The translations under genes and the position numbers were made by a program. A DNA stretch of 64,000 nucleotides from Haplodiscus bocki (lineage: Eukaryota): positions 94,674,001 to 94,738,000 of the forward strand of contig OZ296649.1 of assembly GCA_965655095.1 (NCBI GenBank). The letters run 5' to 3'. Shown piece by piece: positions 14,433 to 62,000 of the stretch (positions are counted from its first letter, which is position 1; each line of letters begins with the position of its first letter). The notes below the pieces were generated by a model, which was not told the DNA's origin, did not search any database, and saw nothing but the letters and a program-made list of their open reading frames with translations.

Positions 14433-14625
14433 TGTACCTAAAAGAGATAAAAAATTATAACTGAAAACTTCATATTTAGACAGAGGATTCGGTTAAAACA
14501 TATTTTACTTTCACCACTTTACAAATTCAACACTTCTGTTCATCTGTTCAGTACTGTGAGCAGGTAGTCCTCTATTCACAGCTCCCAATGCTAGTGACTT
14601 CTTTCACTGCAAGTGTTACTGGACC

Positions 14626-17480
14626 TCACTGCAACGTCATCTGAGTTGGTCTCAACATGAATTTTCTTTTCTCCCAGCACTTGTCCAGCCTTGATTTGAA
14701 TGTAGTGGTGTTAACGGATTCGATAAACTCTCTAGGGAGGTTGTTCCACTCTTTCACCACCATCTGTGTGAAGAAATGCTTCCTAAGGCTAGTTCGACTT
14801 TTATTCATTTTCAGCTTCAATGCGTGGCCTTTGGTCCTATTGTGCCCCTCACGGGTCAGCAGATTTGTCGTCACAGATTGATCGTACCGAGTTGTTGGTA
14901 AGCATTTTGAAGACTTCAATCATATCTCCTCTCAAGCGTCTATATGCTAAGGTTGGCATGCCAAGTTTTTTCAGTCTCTCTTCGTAAGATAGGTCTTTTA
15001 ACTCATGTACACGTTTTGAAGCCCTTCTTTGCACATTCTCGATGAGGTTTTGGAGTTTGACTGACGTGGGGTTCCATACAGAAGTGGCGTACTCTAGGTG
15101 CGGTCTAACAATGCCTCGGAAGAGGAACCTGAATTTCAAAATATCCAATTGAAAGGTCCGTTTGATGAGGCCAACCAATCGATTGGCTTTATTGACTTTA
15201 TTCACAATGTGTTTTTCGAATTTCAGGTCTGTGTCAAATGTCACTACTAAGTCCGTCTCAGTATTATCGCTTGAGATCGGTAGTAGTTTCCCTCGCTCGG
15301 CGTAGTACTCTCGTTCAAGCTTCTTGGCTCTTCCAAACTTTAGTATCTTTGCCTTTTTCGGATGAAACGGCAGCAGCCATTTTTTGCTCCAATCTTCAAG
15401 CCTGTAGAGGTCATTTTGAAGCGATTCACCATCTTCCTTACAGTTCACCTCTTGGTAGATCTTTGTATCATCTGCGAACATCCATGCTTCATTCTCAACA
15501 GCTGCAGGTAGGTCGTTTATGAAGATCACAAAAAGAAGTGGCCCTAGAACGCTTCCTTGCGGGACTCCACTCAAGACTAGATTTTTGGACGATTTTTGAC
15601 CGTTGACAGCCACATGTTGCTTCCTGTTTGTTAGGAAAGTTTCTATCCATCGGTATAACTTTCCTCGAATTCCGTATGACCAGATCTTTGCCATCAGTCT
15701 CCTATATGGAACCTTATCAAAGGCTTTTTGGAAGTCACAATAAACGCAGTCAATGCCTCCGCCTCTATCAAGAATCTGTGTCCACTCTTCTAAGACTTTC
15801 AGCAATTGTAGACTCGTCGATCTTCCTTTCACGAAGCCATATTGTCTATCAGAAATCAAGTTGTTCGACGTCATGTGGGAAATGATATCATCTCTGATAA
15901 TGCTTTCTAGTACTTTACATGCGATGCATGTTAGGCTGACCGGTCGATAGTTCTCCACTTTCTTTTTGTCACCTTTCTTGAAGAGTGCTGTCACCCTCGC
16001 CTCCTTCCAGTCCCCGGGTAGCTCGCTTTTAGCAATGGTGCTTAAAAAAACGATCTGCAGTGGTTCAGTCAAAACTTCTGACAGTTCGGCAAGCACATGA
16101 GGATGGATTTCGTCAAAGCCCGGTGACTTTGTCCTGTTTAGTTCTGCCAACTTCTTTCTGATGGCTGATTCAGTTATGAGGGGCTCCTCAATGTATGAGT
16201 CGACAACAAATTTGTCAATTTCCGGGGGAGGGGTTTTCTCTTCTACAAAAACACTGCTGAAGTAGGTATTCAAGACTTCAGCCTTTCTGGTGTCTGAGGA
16301 TACTACCTCTCCGTCTTCCACGACGAGGTCACTTATGCCAGTTCTGGCTTTAACTTTTGAGTTCACAAAGGTTCAAAATCTCTTCGGGTTTCGTTTTGCT
16401 TCCCGGGCAATTTCGTCTTCAATTTCTCTAGCTTTGGACCTTGTTCGACTCCGGATGTAATTTCTCGCTCTACAGAACTCGTTGTAAGCTGTTTTTGTTT
16501 TGACTCTGAGGTATTTTCTCCAGAGGCTGTTCTTCTTTCGGATTTGTTGTAAGAGGTCTTTATCCAAGGGAACCGAAAACTGTTTTGTGGATCCGGAAAT
16601 GGCTTTTGGCAAACTTTTCTACTGCTGCGCTGATTCTTTTACAAGATTTCATGCTTCGTTGACGCTTGGGGCAGTAGAGAGTACATCAACCCAGTGGTTG
16701 TTTGACAGTACCTCGCGCATGCTTTCGTAGTCTCCCTTAGAATACTTCGATCTTGTTCCTTTTTTGCAGCGTGTTCTTTCCACCTGGGAGAGTTCGAAAG
16801 AAATCACCGAATGGTCACTCTTTCCAAAAGGAGCTTGGCACTGCATGTCGTCGATCTCTGTATCTGCATCCGTGAAGACAAGATCAAGAATGCTAGGGTC
16901 ATCAGATCCTCTGCCTCTTGTTGCAAATTGGACGTGTTGGTGCCAGAAGCAGTCCCTTACCAATTCAGTGAATGAGTGCTCGTTACTGTTCTCACTAAGC
17001 GGTGTCCAGTTCAAGGACCAATCAATTTTCGGGAAGTTGAAATCTCCTACGATAACTTCGTGCGTGAAATTCATGTGATACAGCTCTAAGAGTGTTCATT
17101 AAGGCCTGTTGCTCTTGGGTATCTGAATTCCAGTGACGATAGACGCACCCGAACAAGATTTTTTTCTTTTTTTCCGTTACAAAGTTGAACAAGAATAGTG
17201 TCTTCTGGGCATCCGTTGATCTCAACTCGACTAGACTGAAGCCCAATATCCTGCCTAACGTATACTATTGTACCTCGATGTTCCTTGTTGTTAATTTGTT
17301 TGCTGTAGAATGCGTCATATCCTTCAAAAGCGATATCTGCTTCCTCCAACACAAAGCCATGCTTTTTTGGTTTTACTTCCATCAGGCCGAAAACATCCGG
17401 CTTCTCACTTACTAGCCTTGCACTGATTTCCTCCTTTTTGTTTGTCATCGCATCAGTATTGGAAAAAAGAAACTTCAAGG
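14626..17480 (-). pseudogene. CR1 ORF2: AP endonuclease plus reverse transcriptase (disrupted)
   Basis: APE motifs LKFLFSN, FGLMEVKPK, VIVGDFNFPKIDW, LDLVFT, SDH. RT motifs NYRPVSLT, DFQKAFDKV, SGVPQGSVLGPLLF, FADDTK. C-terminal RTKGHALKL...RKHFFTQ..V.EWN.LP. Several frameshifts, and TGA stops at 16649 and 16373 where Trp would be expected. Confidence 0.95.
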
Positions 17481-18512
17481 ATTGTCGACGAAGGCACCGT
17501 CTAGGCTCTCCGCTGACAGTTTCTCTTTCCGCTTCAGTTTCTGTACCTCTAGTCTGTTCGGAGGTCCTCTCATTCTGTACATGTAGTTTTTTTGCATTCT
17601 CTCCATCTTTGTTTTCGGCCTCTTCAATTTTCAACTTGATCTGCTTCCTCAGATCTTGCGAGAGGTCGTATGAAACGCTGATTGAAGCGAATGATTTGTC
17701 TGCTGCTCTCAACTTTCTCAAATTTCTGAAAAGTAAGTCCCGATCCTCCTTGGAAGGCAATACAATCTTCAGTGGTCTTGAACTCACTCGTTCTGCAGTA
17801 GTACCGTCGCTGTCCTTTGATGTTTTCTTTGCTCCAAGTCTGATTGCTTTTGTTGGTTTGAGGTCACCAATACCTAGTAAGTCTTCGGTGAGCTGTTGGA
17901 AAAACTTGATGTCATCTCCAGCTCTCGCACTGGCCTCCGATTTGTCACTCTCAGGTACTCGATGAAGGATGACGTTTTTTCCCGTTTTTCTTGATCTGCT
18001 TGCTCCAGTCTTTCGTTCTCAATCGTCTCTTTCATGATGGTTCCCAAACCTTTCACCAAGGGAGCATTCCGTTGGGTAACTTCGGACCAGCTCTGTGCGC
18101 TTTTTCGGTCTTCTGAAAGTAAGTTTTCAAGTTTAACTGCAAGGTTTTGTTGGAAAAGTGACAGTTTATCTTCAATCAGCTTCGTGTTGGTGTCTCTAAT
18201 CTCATCGAGTTTGTCTTCCATGACCTTTGCAACAATCGTTTCCTGCGCCTTAGCGTCAATTTGCTTCTCGTCTTTCAACAACCGTTCCATACCCTTCGTT
18301 TCGCAAGATTTGCACAGCCACACCAGTCCAGAGGTTTTTGACATGGCCATCAAGATGCTTGATGGTAATCCTGAGCAGTTACCTGCGTGGTACCATGAGT
18401 TGCACAGAATACATGCTACCGAGCCGTCTTTACATTCACCTGCGCATGCACCACAAGGGTACTTGGTCGAAGTCAATCTCGTATTGTGATTATGACTCAT
18501 GATGTTCGGCAT
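17475..18512 (-). pseudogene. CR1 ORF1: PHD finger, coiled coil and C-terminal ORF1 domain (two 1-nt frameshifts)
   Basis: C4HC3 PHD finger CGAC...CILCNSWYHAGNC...WLCKSC, a coiled coil, and EKREKNVILHRVPES...RPLKIVL...ISVSYDLS...YMYRMRGPP after correcting indels in A-runs near 17978 and 17590. Confidence 0.88.
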
Positions 18513-18624
18513 ATTATGGCGGAAATCAGAATTGCTAGGAGATTCTCGCGCCAACAGAGATCAGACCCGAGGCACTGAGCAAGCTCGCGCCAACAGAGAT
18601 CCTTCTCTCGAGGCACTGAGGAGA

Positions 18625-19239
18625 TCAGAGAGCTCGAATTAGAGGACTACCTGCGTTTCTTTTCTGGAAGCGTTGTCGCTGTCGCTGATTTGGCCGGATG
18701 TTCTTTTTCTTCTTCACCTGTTGGGCAACTGTGATGTTGGATGATAGCACTTCTTTAATATGGTCTGTAACGGCTTGCAATACCTTCAATTCCGTTGTAA
18801 CTTTTGGATGGACTTTTCGGAGGTCAGATTCGAATTCGTTGTCCGTCAAGTCAACCTTCGATTCGATGTCGATGATGTCAATGCCGGTTTCTTTGAGTGC
18901 TGTCAACACGTTATCAGTGTCGTTTCGTTGTATGTGAACTATTGCTGTGATGCGTGATCTCAGCGATACTAAGGTTTGGATAAACTCTACAATGGGACAC
19001 GGTTGGAAGTCGTTTTTTTTTTCGTGGCTGTTGATTGTATTATTGACAGCGTCGTGCCAGATAACCAATCCACTTGCTCCAGTAAGTTCTCCTTGGAGCC
19101 ACTCTTGGGCAAGTTTGCACTTGCTTCGAGGGTGGAAGGAAAGGCCTCCCTCGGCGTCGATGCGACTGAAAAGAGTCTCTGATCGAAAAGCTGTCTTGCA
19201 GTTTCTCAAAGAGCTGGCACCAATCAGTGTAAACACCAT
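18625..19239 (-). CDS. LINE-borne SGNH/GDSL-hydrolase-like (esterase-type) ORF, 204 aa, intact
   Basis: Motif blocks LIGASSL, GGLSF, LVIWHDAVNN and DLRKVHP follow the order of SGNH blocks I, II, III and V, and there is a basic K/R tail. Clearly homologous to 23272-23925. Lies inside the TSD-bounded element. Confidence 0.7.
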   Translation of the reverse strand: MVFTLIGASSLRNCKTAFRSETLFSRIDAEGGLSFHPRSKCKLAQEWLQGELTGASGLVIWHDAVNNTINSHEKKNDFQPCPIVEFIQTLVSLRSRITAIVHIQRNDTDNVLTALKETGIDIIDIESKVDLTDNEFESDLRKVHPKVTTELKVLQAVTDHIKEVLSSNITVAQQVKKKKNIRPNQRQRQRFQKRNAGSPLIRAL

Positions 19240-19358
19240 AAGCAGACTTCACCCGTCTACGGCTAGAGCGACGGGACTTGGCATAGAAGAATAAGTCCAG
19301 GCTCTAGCGCGCAATTTATCTATAAACAAACAACGCGGTGAAAAAGGAAGGGAAAAAT

Positions 19359-19418
19359 CTATTTAATAAGTTTATCACAACAATTAGGCTATTTAATAAG
19401 TTTATCACAACAATTAGG
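19359..19418 (-). other. Two tandem copies of a 30-nt candidate spliced-leader sequence at the LINE 5' end
   Basis: Minus strand cAG|CCTAATTGTTGTGATAAACTTATTAAATAG x2, immediately inside the TSD. The last 14 nt recur at the 5' end of a different LINE (23186-23199). Confidence 0.7.
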
Positions 19419-20430
19419 CTGCACTTCAATAATCACTGACTCCAAAACAATAACTTCAACAAAAATTTGGATTCCGCCCTTCCGAGAGTCTCAAGGGCAA
19501 CCGGCTATACGAAGACATTTTGGTACTTCATGGTTTCAACTTCCTCTGCCACTGTTCAGCCTACCTCTTCGTTTACGTTGTAGGAAGTAGCGATACTGCG
19601 GCAGCTGGTGATATCCCATGCCAATAGCCTACCCACTTTCTGTTGTATGTCGCCTTTTGCCCAGCTGGGCTAAACACTGCATTGCTGCGTGGTATCGTCT
19701 AGTGGTTCGAGATCTTTGTTTTCCCAGACATCTGCTTTCGTGCCTTGCAAGGTGTTCTAAAATTTTGACTAATAATAAGTTTTGTGGCAATTAGAAACCT
19801 AATCAGGCGCTATAACTAAACTCAAATAGAAAACCATATTTTGTACATTGAACCACTTAAATTTTTAGGATTTCACGTGCTGGACCCTTAATATAGAACT
19901 CTAAGGGCACTGAAAACTTAGATTGGATAAAAAAAAACTAGCTAACATAATATGGGTGACAATAAATCAGAGTGGTAACATAAAGAGATAGCAACGTAAG
20001 ATGGCTGCGGCGAGTTTTGTTGAAGTGAAAAAGTCTATTCAGTTCATAAAAATGGAAATAGCTACCGCTACCATACAGCAACACACTGCCACAAAAAAAC
20101 CGAGATTCACACAGCAGCACCAAAAAAAACTACAACCCGAGCTCAACCTTTTATTTCCGCCCATACGTAGAAATGGAAAGCAAATAGTCCACTGAACGCG
20201 TGCTTTTCTTACGTTTACTTTCCAATTGAAAATGCCCGACGCTTCTGGATACAAAACTTTTATCAAACTACATCAAAGTTGCCGTACAAATTGACTGGAA
20301 TAGAAAAATTTCCAATTCTTACACAATGAGTTCTTTAAAAAAATATATGTATTCTCGAAAAACATTTTTTTTCAAAATCAATGAGAATGGCAAAAACGAT
20401 CTAGTCTGCGTATCTACTGGTATTATTTTC

Positions 20431-58925: not shown

Positions 58926-59003
58926 TAGGGAAAAGTACTCTAATTATAATAATTACAAAGAAAATAGGGAAAAGTACTCTAATTATAATAATTACAAAGA
59001 AAA
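58926..59003. repeat. Perfect 39-bp tandem duplication
   Basis: tagggaaaagtactctaattataataattacaaagaaaa x2. Confidence 0.9.
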
Positions 59004-62000
59004 TATGCCGACTCTGGCGGGAAATAAACATTTTTTCCGTCCACTTTTTCCTTTACAGACCGTGTCTTTTCCATCTTTCGACAGAAAATATACGAATTTG
59101 AGCAGTCGAAAATTGACATCAAAGTGCTTATTTCCGCGCCGACACAATAAAAAATAACATAAACAATTGATCAGAAAGAATTTCCATAAAAGGAAAGTAT
59201 TAAAAAATGCACCACAATTAGGTAAAATTCACTGAAATAATCATAGAAAATCATAATTACATGCTTGGGAATTCCCTTGCGTCGACGAAAATGACTTTTG
59301 GAACCAAACTAGGCTTTTTCTTAGTCCATTCCTTGTTAAGACAGGCCGGTTCCTCATTTTGGCCAAAGCGTTCCGGAACGACTACGTAGGTGCTTGTAGC
59401 ACTGTTCGCCGCAGTGCTACTTAGAAGAATGATTTAGGTGGCTACGCAAGCGGTCCGTGTTCATCCAAATTGACAAAGCATAATAGCACAGCGGATTGGT
59501 TGAATTTTTAGTGACGTCACCAGATAGGTAGCGACGTAACAAATATTCACTCCAAGCCTAGAGTAGCTACTAGGTAGGTACGTGTCCGTTCCGTAACAGT
59601 TCCGTCTCAATCTGGATCAGTACACGGGAGTGCTACGTATACGATACGTAGAATTTATATGCAAATTTATTGGGGAGTGATACATTTTTCATACGTATCA
59701 ACTACATGTAAAGGCGTTGATATATTACTGCAATATTATTATATGAATAGAAAAGGAAAAGGTTAAAGTTTCGATACAGTTTCTTCTAATTTTCAGGCAA
59801 TCCGCGGATGTCCTTTTCTTTCTTTATGCACGTAGGTATCGCGGATATACTTCGACACACCCCCTCTTTTGTGAGAGGACATTCCCATGGTCAATCTTCT
59901 TTTCTGCTATCGATGCGCTCTGCTCATCGATGATTGTTCCACATAGAAATCACAAGTAGCAGGAGCTCACACGATGACCAATCGCCAGTAATAATTCGAA
60001 TCATAAAAGAAGATTCATGCTCACTGATAAGAGCTGATGAATTCACCAAGAATAGTTTGTCAAATTACGGAGTACATACGTAAGTTCTCCATAGTTTCCT
60101 TTTCCGCTGGGAATTTCTTTTTAGTTTCCGTATTGAATGGTTAATTGATGAAATTAAGTAATAGTGAGTAAAATTTGAGGGTGTTACTGTGTAAACAATT
60201 CGAGGAAAGCAAAGTTTTGAAAAGAGGAAGTTTTTAGTTTCGTTCCTCAGCGTATCCTTGAAATATCATTCTGACGTCATTGCTGGCAGACAAATTCATC
60301 AAAATTAAACTGAGTCAGTGGTTAATGAATAAAGCATGTAAATCCACGAATTGATAGTCAAGCCTTGCTTTTCATAGAATGTCTGAGAAGAGTGTGATCT
60401 GCATGAGGAGATCACTTTATCTCAAGCAGATACTAAGTCAGTTGTAGGTTCTGCCGGAACCCATTTTGCCACTTCCATCAACCTCCATTTGCCCCTGTAT
60501 AAAAGTTGTTGTGGATATGGTCGAGGAGAATCCGGGTGGAGTTCGGGAACAACTTGTTGTTGGAGATCATGGCGAAGCTGATGAAGATGCGGGGAGGGAG
60601 GCAGACATCGAGGGTGAGGATGTCGATGTTGATTGTGGTGCTCCCGCGTTGGCGATCTCCAGGTTTCAGTACCAGGGTTTCACTTTCTCAAACATTGTCC
60701 CAGGAAAATGACTGGAGGGACAGACTTTGTCTGAAGGTGTTGTTGACACCGCTCAACTTCCGCAATGTGAGTTTTCAAATCTTCAAAATTTACCTTTAAC
60801 CTTTTATTTAGAATTTCCTTGCTGGCCAGTCATTGAATTCTATTATGTTAGTTGTGCTGCGCGCGCTGAAACCTGAAGATGACTTCGTGAGGCTATTGTG
60901 TTTTGGTGTATAATTGTTAGTGTTTTAGTGTATCATCAAGCACAATTGTTGTTTTACTTATCTGTCCGCCAGCTCCCAAAGGATTATTTTCCCGTGTTTT
61001 GTTCCTGTTATTTGAATTTGACTTCTGTTGCGGAGGGGAACGAAACTGTAAATCCAACCTTCGTGCTGAAAGTTAACAAAAAACTACTAAGTTGAACGTC
61101 CAAATTGTCTAATTTACGACTTGTGATAAAATAATTTTTCTATGCCTGGCCATGCAACTGGGCTATCGAATTCGACAACCTTCGCAAAGCTACTAAAAGA
61201 ATGACTGTGCGTAGAGATTTTTACAGTAGCTGCCCGTCGTTTTTAATAGGTCAGCGTTTTAACCTTATGTGAGTGAATTAAGCATTCGCCCTTTTGCTTT
61301 GTTGCTTGGATTCCAGTAATTCTCAATTGTGTTGACCAGGGTTTTGAATGTTTTCTTCAAAAATCATAATTTTTGGCTACAGTCCTTCTCGCAATCTCAT
61401 TATTTTCTCAAAACTGTCAATACTCTAAACGTTCATTGCTGTCAGTCAAGGAGAAAAACAACCACAAAACCTCCAATTACTGACATATTCGAACTTTTTC
61501 ACACTGTGGTTCAACTTAGAGACACCAAATTGATTCACGGCCGGACAAATTACAGCAACATCAACATTCCAACTCAGAGCCGAAAACCAAGTCCGTCTTT
61601 CCGGAAGAATGCAAGTCAGTTGGTGAAGTTCTCAATTCAAAATTTTCCAAAATACTCGACGGAAGAGAATGTACTCTGACTAAACATCTCGGAACAATCA
61701 GTTTTCATTCTTCATGTCACTCAACTCTATTTTCAAAACCAAATATATAAAGCCTTAAAATTTCTCAACGTTTTTCTCACTGGTTTTTGTTTTAGTGAAC
61801 TCTTTTATCTTTCAGCCCAAGGTAAGCAATTTCTCCAGATTGTTCCTACCTGGGCCACGTCGTTGTGGAACTAAGTAGCGTTGATATCTTCCAAAGTTGT
61901 CGATTTCTGAAGAGAGGAACAAGAGAGACAAAAGTAGGCAATTCAGCTATGCAACAACTGACGGGTTAAAAACACAGACGCTCACAATTTATCTATACAG

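What the first reader, a model, noticed from the sequence alone, without database searches (positions are those of the whole stretch)
19359..19421. Head-to-tail doubled leader joined at AG: footprint of repeated trans-splice and retrotranspose cycles
Seen: the outer copy is preceded by (C)AG, and the inner copy starts at CCTAATT directly after the terminal AG of the outer copy. Known: dinoflagellate retrogenes carry tandem relict spliced leaders, each truncated just after an AG that was reused as a trans-splice acceptor. Inference: an earlier integrated leader (..AG|CCTAATT..) acted as the acceptor for a new leader, so this lineage went through at least two RNA-to-DNA cycles. The integrated leader would then supply its own acceptor site in each new insertion.
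Basis: partly seen in the sequence, partly recalled or inferred. Interest (0 to 1): 0.78.

Follow-up and report, generated by a model that had tools for sequence, protein, structure and literature searches.

The report
Doubled spliced leader on one LINE
One jumping gene (a LINE) in this acoel-worm genome starts with two exact head-to-tail copies of the worm's own spliced leader. The join fits a second round of trans-splicing, but it is the only such join in 1.5 Gb, so it is a one-off and not a dinoflagellate-style recycling habit.

Summary
Window 19359-19418 (minus strand) holds two exact copies of a 30-nt unit, preceded by CAG and followed directly by a broken CR1-like LINE.

- **The unit is the real spliced leader (SL).** Hundreds of copies followed by GT lie in a 5S-linked array on C9, and it matches the published Symsagittifera roscoffensis SL. 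Retro-copied leaders are 32 nt: AG, a 28-nt core, then AG. The inner copy here has lost or shares its 5' AG, as a splice at that AG would give.
- **The join is unique.** It occurs once in the genome (up to 2 mismatches). In this LINE family, 28 of 30 full-length 5' ends have one leader, one has two, and one has a host exon between leader and LINE. About seven other nested-leader loci have other phases. Most keep the inner AG, and some have 3'-truncated outer leaders that splicing cannot make.
For this locus, re-trans-splicing at the integrated leader's 5' AG is still my best explanation (about 0.45). Supporting it, the LINE's first base is a real 3' splice site (a host exon is spliced onto it in L067), and seven copies carry the leader at a second acceptor (+40).
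- **Rivals remain.** These are a reverse-transcriptase template jump on AG microhomology, later DNA duplication, and a doubled SL donor RNA. No RNA data were available.

The scan had already found SL-headed LINEs on other DNA of this genome.

The parts
19389..19420 (-). Outer spliced leader, full 32 nt: 5' AG at 19420-19419, 28-nt core, and 3' AG at 19390-19389 (this AG is also where the inner copy's own 5' AG would be).
   Evidence: The 32-nt form is inferred from 61 dispersed copies and the SL genes.
19359..19388 (-). Inner spliced leader: a 30-nt unit starting at CCTAATT, with no AG of its own, ending in AG at 19360-19359. Zero mismatches.
19421..19427 (-). 5' junction. One extra C (19421), then a candidate target-site duplication GAAGTG (19427-19422) that recurs at 14536-14531.
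   Evidence: Read from the sequence. The 3' end was not checked against other copies. Long contigs of X1 and X3 stop matching the window at 19424.
14535..19358 (-). CR1-like non-LTR retrotransposon body. It has a 5' UTR, an ORF with a PHD-like finger, an AP-type endonuclease split over two ORFs (so this copy is broken), a reverse transcriptase, and a 3' tail of TGAACAGA x2 at 14550-14535.
   Evidence: RVT_1 at 112.7 bits; Exo_endo_phos_2 at 40.8 bits; PHD weak. The copy differs by 1.07% from the family's column majority over the first 1.5 kb.
19320..19321 (-). Alternative trans-splice acceptor AG inside the 5' UTR (tttgtttatAG, next exon base 19319, LINE position 40). Seven other genomic copies have the leader joined here.
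   Evidence: BLAST starts those copies at position 36 only because the leader's last four bases, ATAG, equal LINE bases 36-39.

Best explanation
The doubled leader is most likely the product of an alternative-acceptor trans-splice.

1. An earlier genomic copy of this LINE already carried one retro-copied spliced leader (AG, 28-nt core, AG).
2. That copy was transcribed from upstream, probably by read-through from host DNA.
3. Normally the spliceosome uses the AG at the 3' end of the integrated leader. That removes the old leader and adds a new one, so the product has a single leader. This time it used the AG at the leader's 5' end, 30 nt upstream, so a fresh SL was joined to CCTAATT...
4. The doubly tagged RNA was reverse-transcribed and inserted here.

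**Shown:** the unit is the SL; the join is in splice phase; LINE base 1 is a true 3' splice site; the family uses at least two acceptors.

**Inferred:** that the 5' AG of an integrated leader was the acceptor in this event, and that transcription came from upstream.

The event was rare and left no descendants.
For: - **SL identity.** There are 742 hits of leader plus GTA, mostly in a tandem array on C9 with a 5S rRNA gene in each unit. The SL RNA folds with the donor inside stem I, followed by an AUUUGA Sm-like site and a terminal hairpin (z = -3.7). The leader is identical to the published S. roscoffensis SL.
- **32-nt form.** The retro-copied SL is AG, core, AG, so the observed AG-core-AG-core-AG is exactly the predicted splice product.
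- **Chance DNA duplication is unlikely.** Only 2 unrelated perfect two-copy duplications of period 20-40 were found in 268 kb. That scales to roughly 500 of period 30 genome-wide, or about 0.001 expected in exact register on one of about 900 dispersed leaders.
- **L067 (same family).** It reads leader, then 118 nt, then LINE base 1. Those 118 nt are a host exon at C1:48325740-48325860, flanked there by ...caatgAG on one side and GTTAGT on the other. A normal donor was therefore spliced onto the LINE's 5' boundary.
- **Second acceptor.** Seven copies have the leader at position +40.
- **Spacer cases.** Three nested-leader loci have a perfect outer leader, a spacer of 15, 36 or 62 nt, and an equal or more diverged inner leader (L049, L080, L003). 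This fits re-splicing at AGs further upstream.
Against: - The join is unique in 1.5 Gb, and only 1 of 30 family copies has it.
- L044 has a 3'-truncated outer leader abutting a complete inner AG-leader. L046-48 and L081 are also irregular. Splicing cannot make these, so a non-splicing process also produces adjacent leaders.
- AG occurs in the SL only at its two ends. A reverse-transcriptase jump guided by 2-nt microhomology would therefore land in the same phase.
- The spacers of L080 and L003 have no second copy in the genome, so no source copy was found.
- Both leader units here have 0 mismatches, so their relative age is uninformative.
- No RNA run was available.
Confidence: 0.45

Rival explanations
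1. Reverse-transcriptase template jump. During target-primed reverse transcription the enzyme reached the capped 5' end (AG...) of the SL-headed LINE RNA. It then re-annealed through the 2-nt AG to the AG at the 3' end of a leader, on the same or another RNA, and copied a leader a second time.
For: - L044 is a perfect 26-nt-period leader duplication whose outer unit stops 6 nt before the leader's end and abuts a complete AG-leader with 1 nt of microhomology.
- L046-48 show a truncated outer unit, possibly with an extra G.
- L081 has an inverted leader piece.
- L083's spacer is the 5' UTR of another SL-LINE family.
- Chimeric LINE insertions by template switching are known for L1 with U6 (abstract of 10.1101/2025.02.02.635956, seen).
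Against: - With random landing, exact splice phase is about a 1-in-100 outcome per event.
- No untemplated bases lie at the join.
- The spacer cases with perfect outer leaders fit splicing equally well.
Confidence: 0.25
2. Post-insertion DNA tandem duplication (replication slippage or unequal exchange) of 30 bp between the two AG dinucleotides of a single integrated leader.
For: - The two units are identical.
- The event is unique.
- Perfect short tandem duplications do occur elsewhere, for example window 58926-59005.
Against: - The expected number of random period-30 duplications in exact leader register is about 0.001.
- Two bases of homology are a weak guide.
Confidence: 0.1
3. A doubled SL made at the RNA level. 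Read-through transcripts of the SL gene array are themselves trans-spliced at the AG just upstream of the SL exon (context ...ttgcttttAG, a good acceptor). This gives an SL RNA with two leaders, which then donates both to the LINE mRNA in a single cycle.
For: - The SL genes have a pyrimidine-rich tract and AG directly before CCTAATT.
- A rate of about 1 in 900 retro-copies would fit a rare donor species.
Against: - No SL gene with a doubled exon exists in the genome.
- No RNA evidence was available either way.
Confidence: 0.1
4. Assembly artefact: the second unit was created by the assembler.
For: The repeat is short and lies at a repeat boundary.
Against: Independent k-mer contigs from three runs hold the join, at depth similar to or above the single-copy flank.
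Confidence: 0.02

Closest known systems
Relict tandem spliced leaders of dinoflagellate retrogenes ('recycled' cDNAs; Slamovits and Keeling 2008, as reviewed in PMC6050394 and PMC5585692)
   Same: A retro-copied SL sits in the DNA, and a further SL lies 5' of it, joined at an AG within or at the edge of the older leader. This is read as a new trans-splice on a transcript of a retrocopy.
   Different: - In dinoflagellates multiple leaders were reported in about 20% of full-length transcripts across many genes (PMC6050394). Here the join is a single locus in 1.5 Gb.
- The host is an animal (an acoel) and the carrier is a LINE rather than a cellular retrogene.
- Only 2 nt of the inner leader are lost, because the acoel SL starts with AG.
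Chimeric LINE insertions by RT template switching (U6/L1 type)
   Same: A second RNA's 5' part is fused to the 5' end of a LINE copy. Short microhomology at the join is compatible.
   Different: The second segment here is exactly one leader in splice phase, with no snRNA body and no extra bases.
5'-end processing of co-transcribed LINEs by HDV-like ribozymes (R2; L1Tc, PMC3185411 and PMC3383444)
   Same: A promoter-poor LINE is released from a longer host-driven transcript by an RNA-processing step at its exact 5' boundary.
   Different: Here the step is spliceosomal (SL trans-splicing, or cis-splicing as in L067), not self-cleavage. It also adds a capped leader that is then copied into DNA.
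SL-headed LINE families of this same genome
   Same: Same leader and same junction rule (leader AG, then LINE base 1).
   Different: Those copies have a single leader. This locus is the only exact double.

Membership tests
Spliced-leader exon of an SL RNA gene | Genomic genes in which the leader is followed by a GT donor, usually in tandem arrays | tested here: met
   742 hits of leader plus GTA, mostly in an array on C9 from 72.47 Mb with a period of 1.7-2.6 kb. Each unit carries a 5S rRNA gene (117.8 bits)..
Spliced-leader exon of an SL RNA gene | SL RNA fold: donor inside stem I, single-stranded Sm-like site, 3' hairpin | tested here: met
   MFE -27.3 kcal/mol, z = -3.7. The leader's 3' part pairs with the intron, followed by AUUUGA and then a 10-bp hairpin.
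Spliced-leader exon of an SL RNA gene | Found on the 5' ends of mRNAs | not testable with these tools
   No RNA run was on record. The published transcriptome-derived SL of S. roscoffensis is identical (PMC9911081).
Dinoflagellate-type tandem relict SL (recycled retrocopy) | Inner leader truncated exactly after an AG that served as acceptor | tested here: met
   AG-core-AG-core-AG at 19359-19420. The full retro-copied SL is AG, core, AG.
Dinoflagellate-type tandem relict SL (recycled retrocopy) | Recurrent: many loci or genes with the same truncation phase | tested here: not met
   The join occurs once in 1.5 Gb at up to 2 mismatches. Other nested leaders have other phases.
Dinoflagellate-type tandem relict SL (recycled retrocopy) | Inner (older) units more diverged than outer ones | tested here: inconclusive
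   Here the count is 0 and 0 mismatches. The inner unit is more diverged in L080 and L003, the outer in L046-48, L081 and L083.
Dinoflagellate-type tandem relict SL (recycled retrocopy) | Transcripts carrying a new SL upstream of the relict | not testable with these tools
   No RNA runs were served for this organism.
RT template-switch chimera | Join at the very 5' end of the LINE RNA, with microhomology, and in phases unrelated to splice sites | tested here: inconclusive
   The window join has 2 nt (AG) of possible microhomology but is in splice phase. L044 and L046-48 show non-splice phases.
CR1-like non-LTR retrotransposon | AP endonuclease plus reverse transcriptase, with a short repeat tail | tested here: met
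   (RVT_1, Exo_endo_phos_2). The tail TGAACAGA x2 is seen. Clade assignment by phylogeny was not done.

The most novel reading that the evidence does not exclude
In this acoel, a retro-copied spliced leader acts as a portable 3' splice site. Each new LINE insertion would then need no promoter of its own: any host transcript running through it is cut and re-capped by trans-splicing at the leader's AGs. The doubled leader (5' AG used), the +40 copies and the host-exon chimera L067 would be three footprints of one mechanism, an animal counterpart of ribozyme-processed LINEs and of dinoflagellate cDNA recycling.
Probability: 0.35. Interest if true: 0.7.

Novelty: new variant of a known kind. Interest (0 to 1): 0.4.

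Why it matters
If the re-splicing reading holds, this locus, together with L067 and the +40 copies, gives sequence-level evidence that integrated SL-headed LINEs in an animal are transcribed from outside and receive their 5' end by splicing in each cycle. That would explain how many unrelated LINE families thrive without an obvious internal promoter, and it links animal SL trans-splicing to transposon biology. As an isolated doubled tag it is only a curiosity. It does not show dinoflagellate-like recycling.

Tried and rejected
- **Genome-wide AG-phase join.** Only the window matched, so a recurrent phenomenon is rejected.
- **Source-copy test.** The 36-nt (L080) and 62-nt (L003) spacers were searched at up to 3 mismatches. 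Each is unique, so neither a source copy nor a donor exon was found.
- **Source LINE of the L067 chimera.** I looked for it in the intron after the host exon. There was no LINE in the next 10 kb or in two other 10-kb pieces.
- **Empty-site allele in the assembly.** A two-anchor pattern gave no match.
- **RNA evidence.** No RNA run is on record.
- **Relative age of the two units.** Both have 0 mismatches. About 0.6 are expected at 1.07% divergence, so this is uninformative.
- **3' end.** Comparison within the fetched data found no other 3' end.
- **Literature.** Searches for SL-headed LINEs in animals found none in the library. The chaetognath genome paper says nothing on it.

Full report
**What is there**

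On the minus strand the window reads C-AG, then a 30-nt unit (CCTAATT...AAATAG) at 19418-19389. The same unit follows without any difference at 19388-19359, and then ATTTTTCCC... begins. TRF reports period 30, 2.1 copies and 100% matches. The pattern search finds two exact matches, against none in 100 shuffles.

Downstream runs a roughly 4.8-kb non-LTR retrotransposon:
- an ORF with a PHD-like finger;
- an AP-type endonuclease split over two ORFs;
- a reverse transcriptase (RVT_1, 112.7 bits);
- a tail of TGAACAGA x2 ending at 14535.

A candidate 6-bp target-site duplication, GAAGTG, lies at 19427-19422 and at 14536-14531. I read this from the sequence only.

**The unit is the organism's spliced leader**

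The leader occurs 1648 times in the 1.5-Gb genome at up to 2 mismatches. Of these, 742 are followed by GTA, nearly all in a tandem array on C9. Each array unit reads ...ttgcttttAG, then CCTAATT...AAATAG, then gtaagt..., and carries a 5S rRNA gene.

The 111-nt SL RNA folds with the donor inside stem I, an AUUUGA Sm-like site and a terminal hairpin (z = -3.7). The sequence is identical to the SL published for the acoel Symsagittifera roscoffensis, which is written there with a leading G (PMC9911081).

**The true 5' end of the leader**

In 61 dispersed copies with unique flanks:
- position -1 is G in 58;
- position -2 is A in 49 and T in 10;
- position -3 is at background.

The SL genes also have AG there. 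The retro-copied SL is therefore 32 nt: AG, a 28-nt core, then AG. The window has AG-core-AG-core-AG. The inner copy lacks its own AG, or shares it with the outer copy's 3' AG.

**How common is it?**

About 900 leaders are dispersed, heading at least eight different downstream families.

In the window's own LINE family I examined 30 full-length 5' ends at 95-100% identity:

| 5' end | Copies |
|---|---|
| One leader | 28 |
| Two leaders (this locus) | 1 |
| Leader, host exon, then LINE (L067) | 1 |

The 28-nt join occurs once in the genome at up to 2 mismatches.

Searches for two leader cores up to 92 nt apart found about seven other independent loci (details):

| Locus | Outer leader | Between | Inner leader |
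|---|---|---|---|
| L044 | stops 6 nt before its 3' end | none | complete, with AG |
| L046-48 (one event, locally duplicated) | diverged and truncated | none | AGCC... |
| L049 | perfect | 15 nt | AG-leader |
| L080 (same LINE family) | perfect | 36 nt | AG-leader with 1 mismatch |
| L003 | perfect | 62 nt | altered leader |
| L081 | has an inverted piece | - | - |
| L083 | - | 5' UTR of another SL-LINE family | - |

Only the window's inner unit starts at CC.

**Is it real DNA?**

Logan contigs of runs X3 and X4 cover 19369-19415 with no difference, at depth 32 and 70.9 against flank depths of 19.9 and 31.5. A contig of X2 covers 19349-19396. The join is therefore present in the reads.

All of these runs belong to one study and are probably the assembly's own data. 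None meets the 31-nt-each-side bridging rule.

**Mechanism**

*Random DNA duplication.* In 268 kb I found two unrelated perfect two-copy duplications of period 20-40. That is roughly 500 of period 30 genome-wide, or about 0.001 expected in exact register on a leader.

*Evidence for splicing at the LINE's 5' boundary.*
- In L067 the LINE's base 1 is preceded by 118 nt that follow a leader.
- Those 118 nt are a host exon at C1:48325740-48325860 (97% identity). There it is flanked by ...caatgAG on one side and GTTAGT on the other.
- This is a processed chimera: SL, then host exon 1, then the LINE. A source copy's 5' boundary therefore served as a 3' splice site.
- In nearly all genomic copies, the sequence just upstream of that boundary is the integrated leader's ...AAATAG.
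- Seven copies carry the leader at a second acceptor inside the 5' UTR (AG at 19321-19320, exon from position 40).

The family thus uses acceptors at +1 and +40. Using the leader's own 5' AG at -30 would give exactly the window's structure.

*Evidence for a rival process.* L044, and probably L046-48 and L081, cannot be made by splicing. They point to reverse-transcriptase jumps at the capped 5' end. AG occurs in the SL only at its two ends, so a microhomology-guided jump would land in the same phase.

*A fourth route.* Trans-splicing of SL-array read-through RNA at the good acceptor just before the SL exon would give a doubled donor.

Without RNA data these routes cannot be separated. My odds:

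| Explanation | Odds |
|---|---|
| Re-trans-splicing at the integrated leader's 5' AG | 0.45 |
| RT template jump | 0.25 |
| Later DNA duplication | 0.10 |
| Doubled SL donor | 0.10 |
| Artefact or other | remainder |

**Age**

This copy differs by 1.07% from the family's column majority over 1.5 kb, in mid-range for the family. Its endonuclease ORF is broken, and it has no doubled-leader descendants.

**Comparison with what is known**

The closest known case is the tandem relict SL of dinoflagellate retrogenes (PMC6050394). The logic is the same, but there it is widespread and affects cellular genes. Functionally, SL or cis-splicing at the LINE boundary resembles the HDV-like ribozyme processing of R2 and L1Tc (titles and abstracts seen).

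I found no paper in the library on SL-headed LINEs in animals. Earlier notes of this scan had already reported SL-headed LINEs elsewhere in this genome. None reported a doubled leader.

Noticed in passing
L067 (G000:C2:64766600-64769778) and L087 (G000:C1:48324240-48327360): A chimeric retrocopy made of SL, a 118-nt host first exon, and the LINE from its base 1. The parent exon on C1 has an AG acceptor and a GT donor at exactly these ends. This shows that a LINE copy's 5' boundary acted as a 3' splice site for a host donor.
   Followed up: partly
window 19319-19321; seven genomic places listed: A second trans-splice acceptor sits inside the LINE's 5' UTR. Seven copies have the leader joined at LINE position 40.
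   Followed up: yes
window 19424 (records 8 and 24): Two long contigs (1440 nt in X1, 665 nt in X3) match the flank only down to 19424, then run on for 1036 and 259 unlike bases. This may be an empty (pre-insertion) allele, which would make the LINE insertion polymorphic. The X3 contig differs from the window at 5 of 227 flank bases.
   Followed up: partly
L044 (G000:C1:84945788-84948823): A perfect 26-nt-period leader duplication. The outer leader lacks its last 6 nt and its 5' AG, and abuts a complete AG-leader. It is not a splice product and looks like an RT jump.
   Followed up: partly
G000:C2:107188626-107199010 (L046-L048): A local tandem array of about 3.9 kb. Its units each begin with a diverged, truncated leader followed by a full AG-leader and an SL-headed element.
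   Followed up: no
61 dispersed leaders: Ten of 61 retro-copied leaders have TG instead of AG before CCTAATT. This could reflect a variant SL gene or start-site heterogeneity.
   Followed up: no
table 5c (run X3): The reads contain another leader, 37-nt spacer, leader arrangement that the exact-anchor searches of the assembly did not return.
   Followed up: no
window 19262-19290 and L003/L049 downstream: Different SL-headed LINE families share a 5' UTR motif (ctctagccgtRgacgggtgaag) that can pair with the preceding cccgtc. This may be a conserved hairpin.
   Followed up: no
window 58926-59005: An unrelated perfect 39-bp tandem duplication, used only as background.
   Followed up: no
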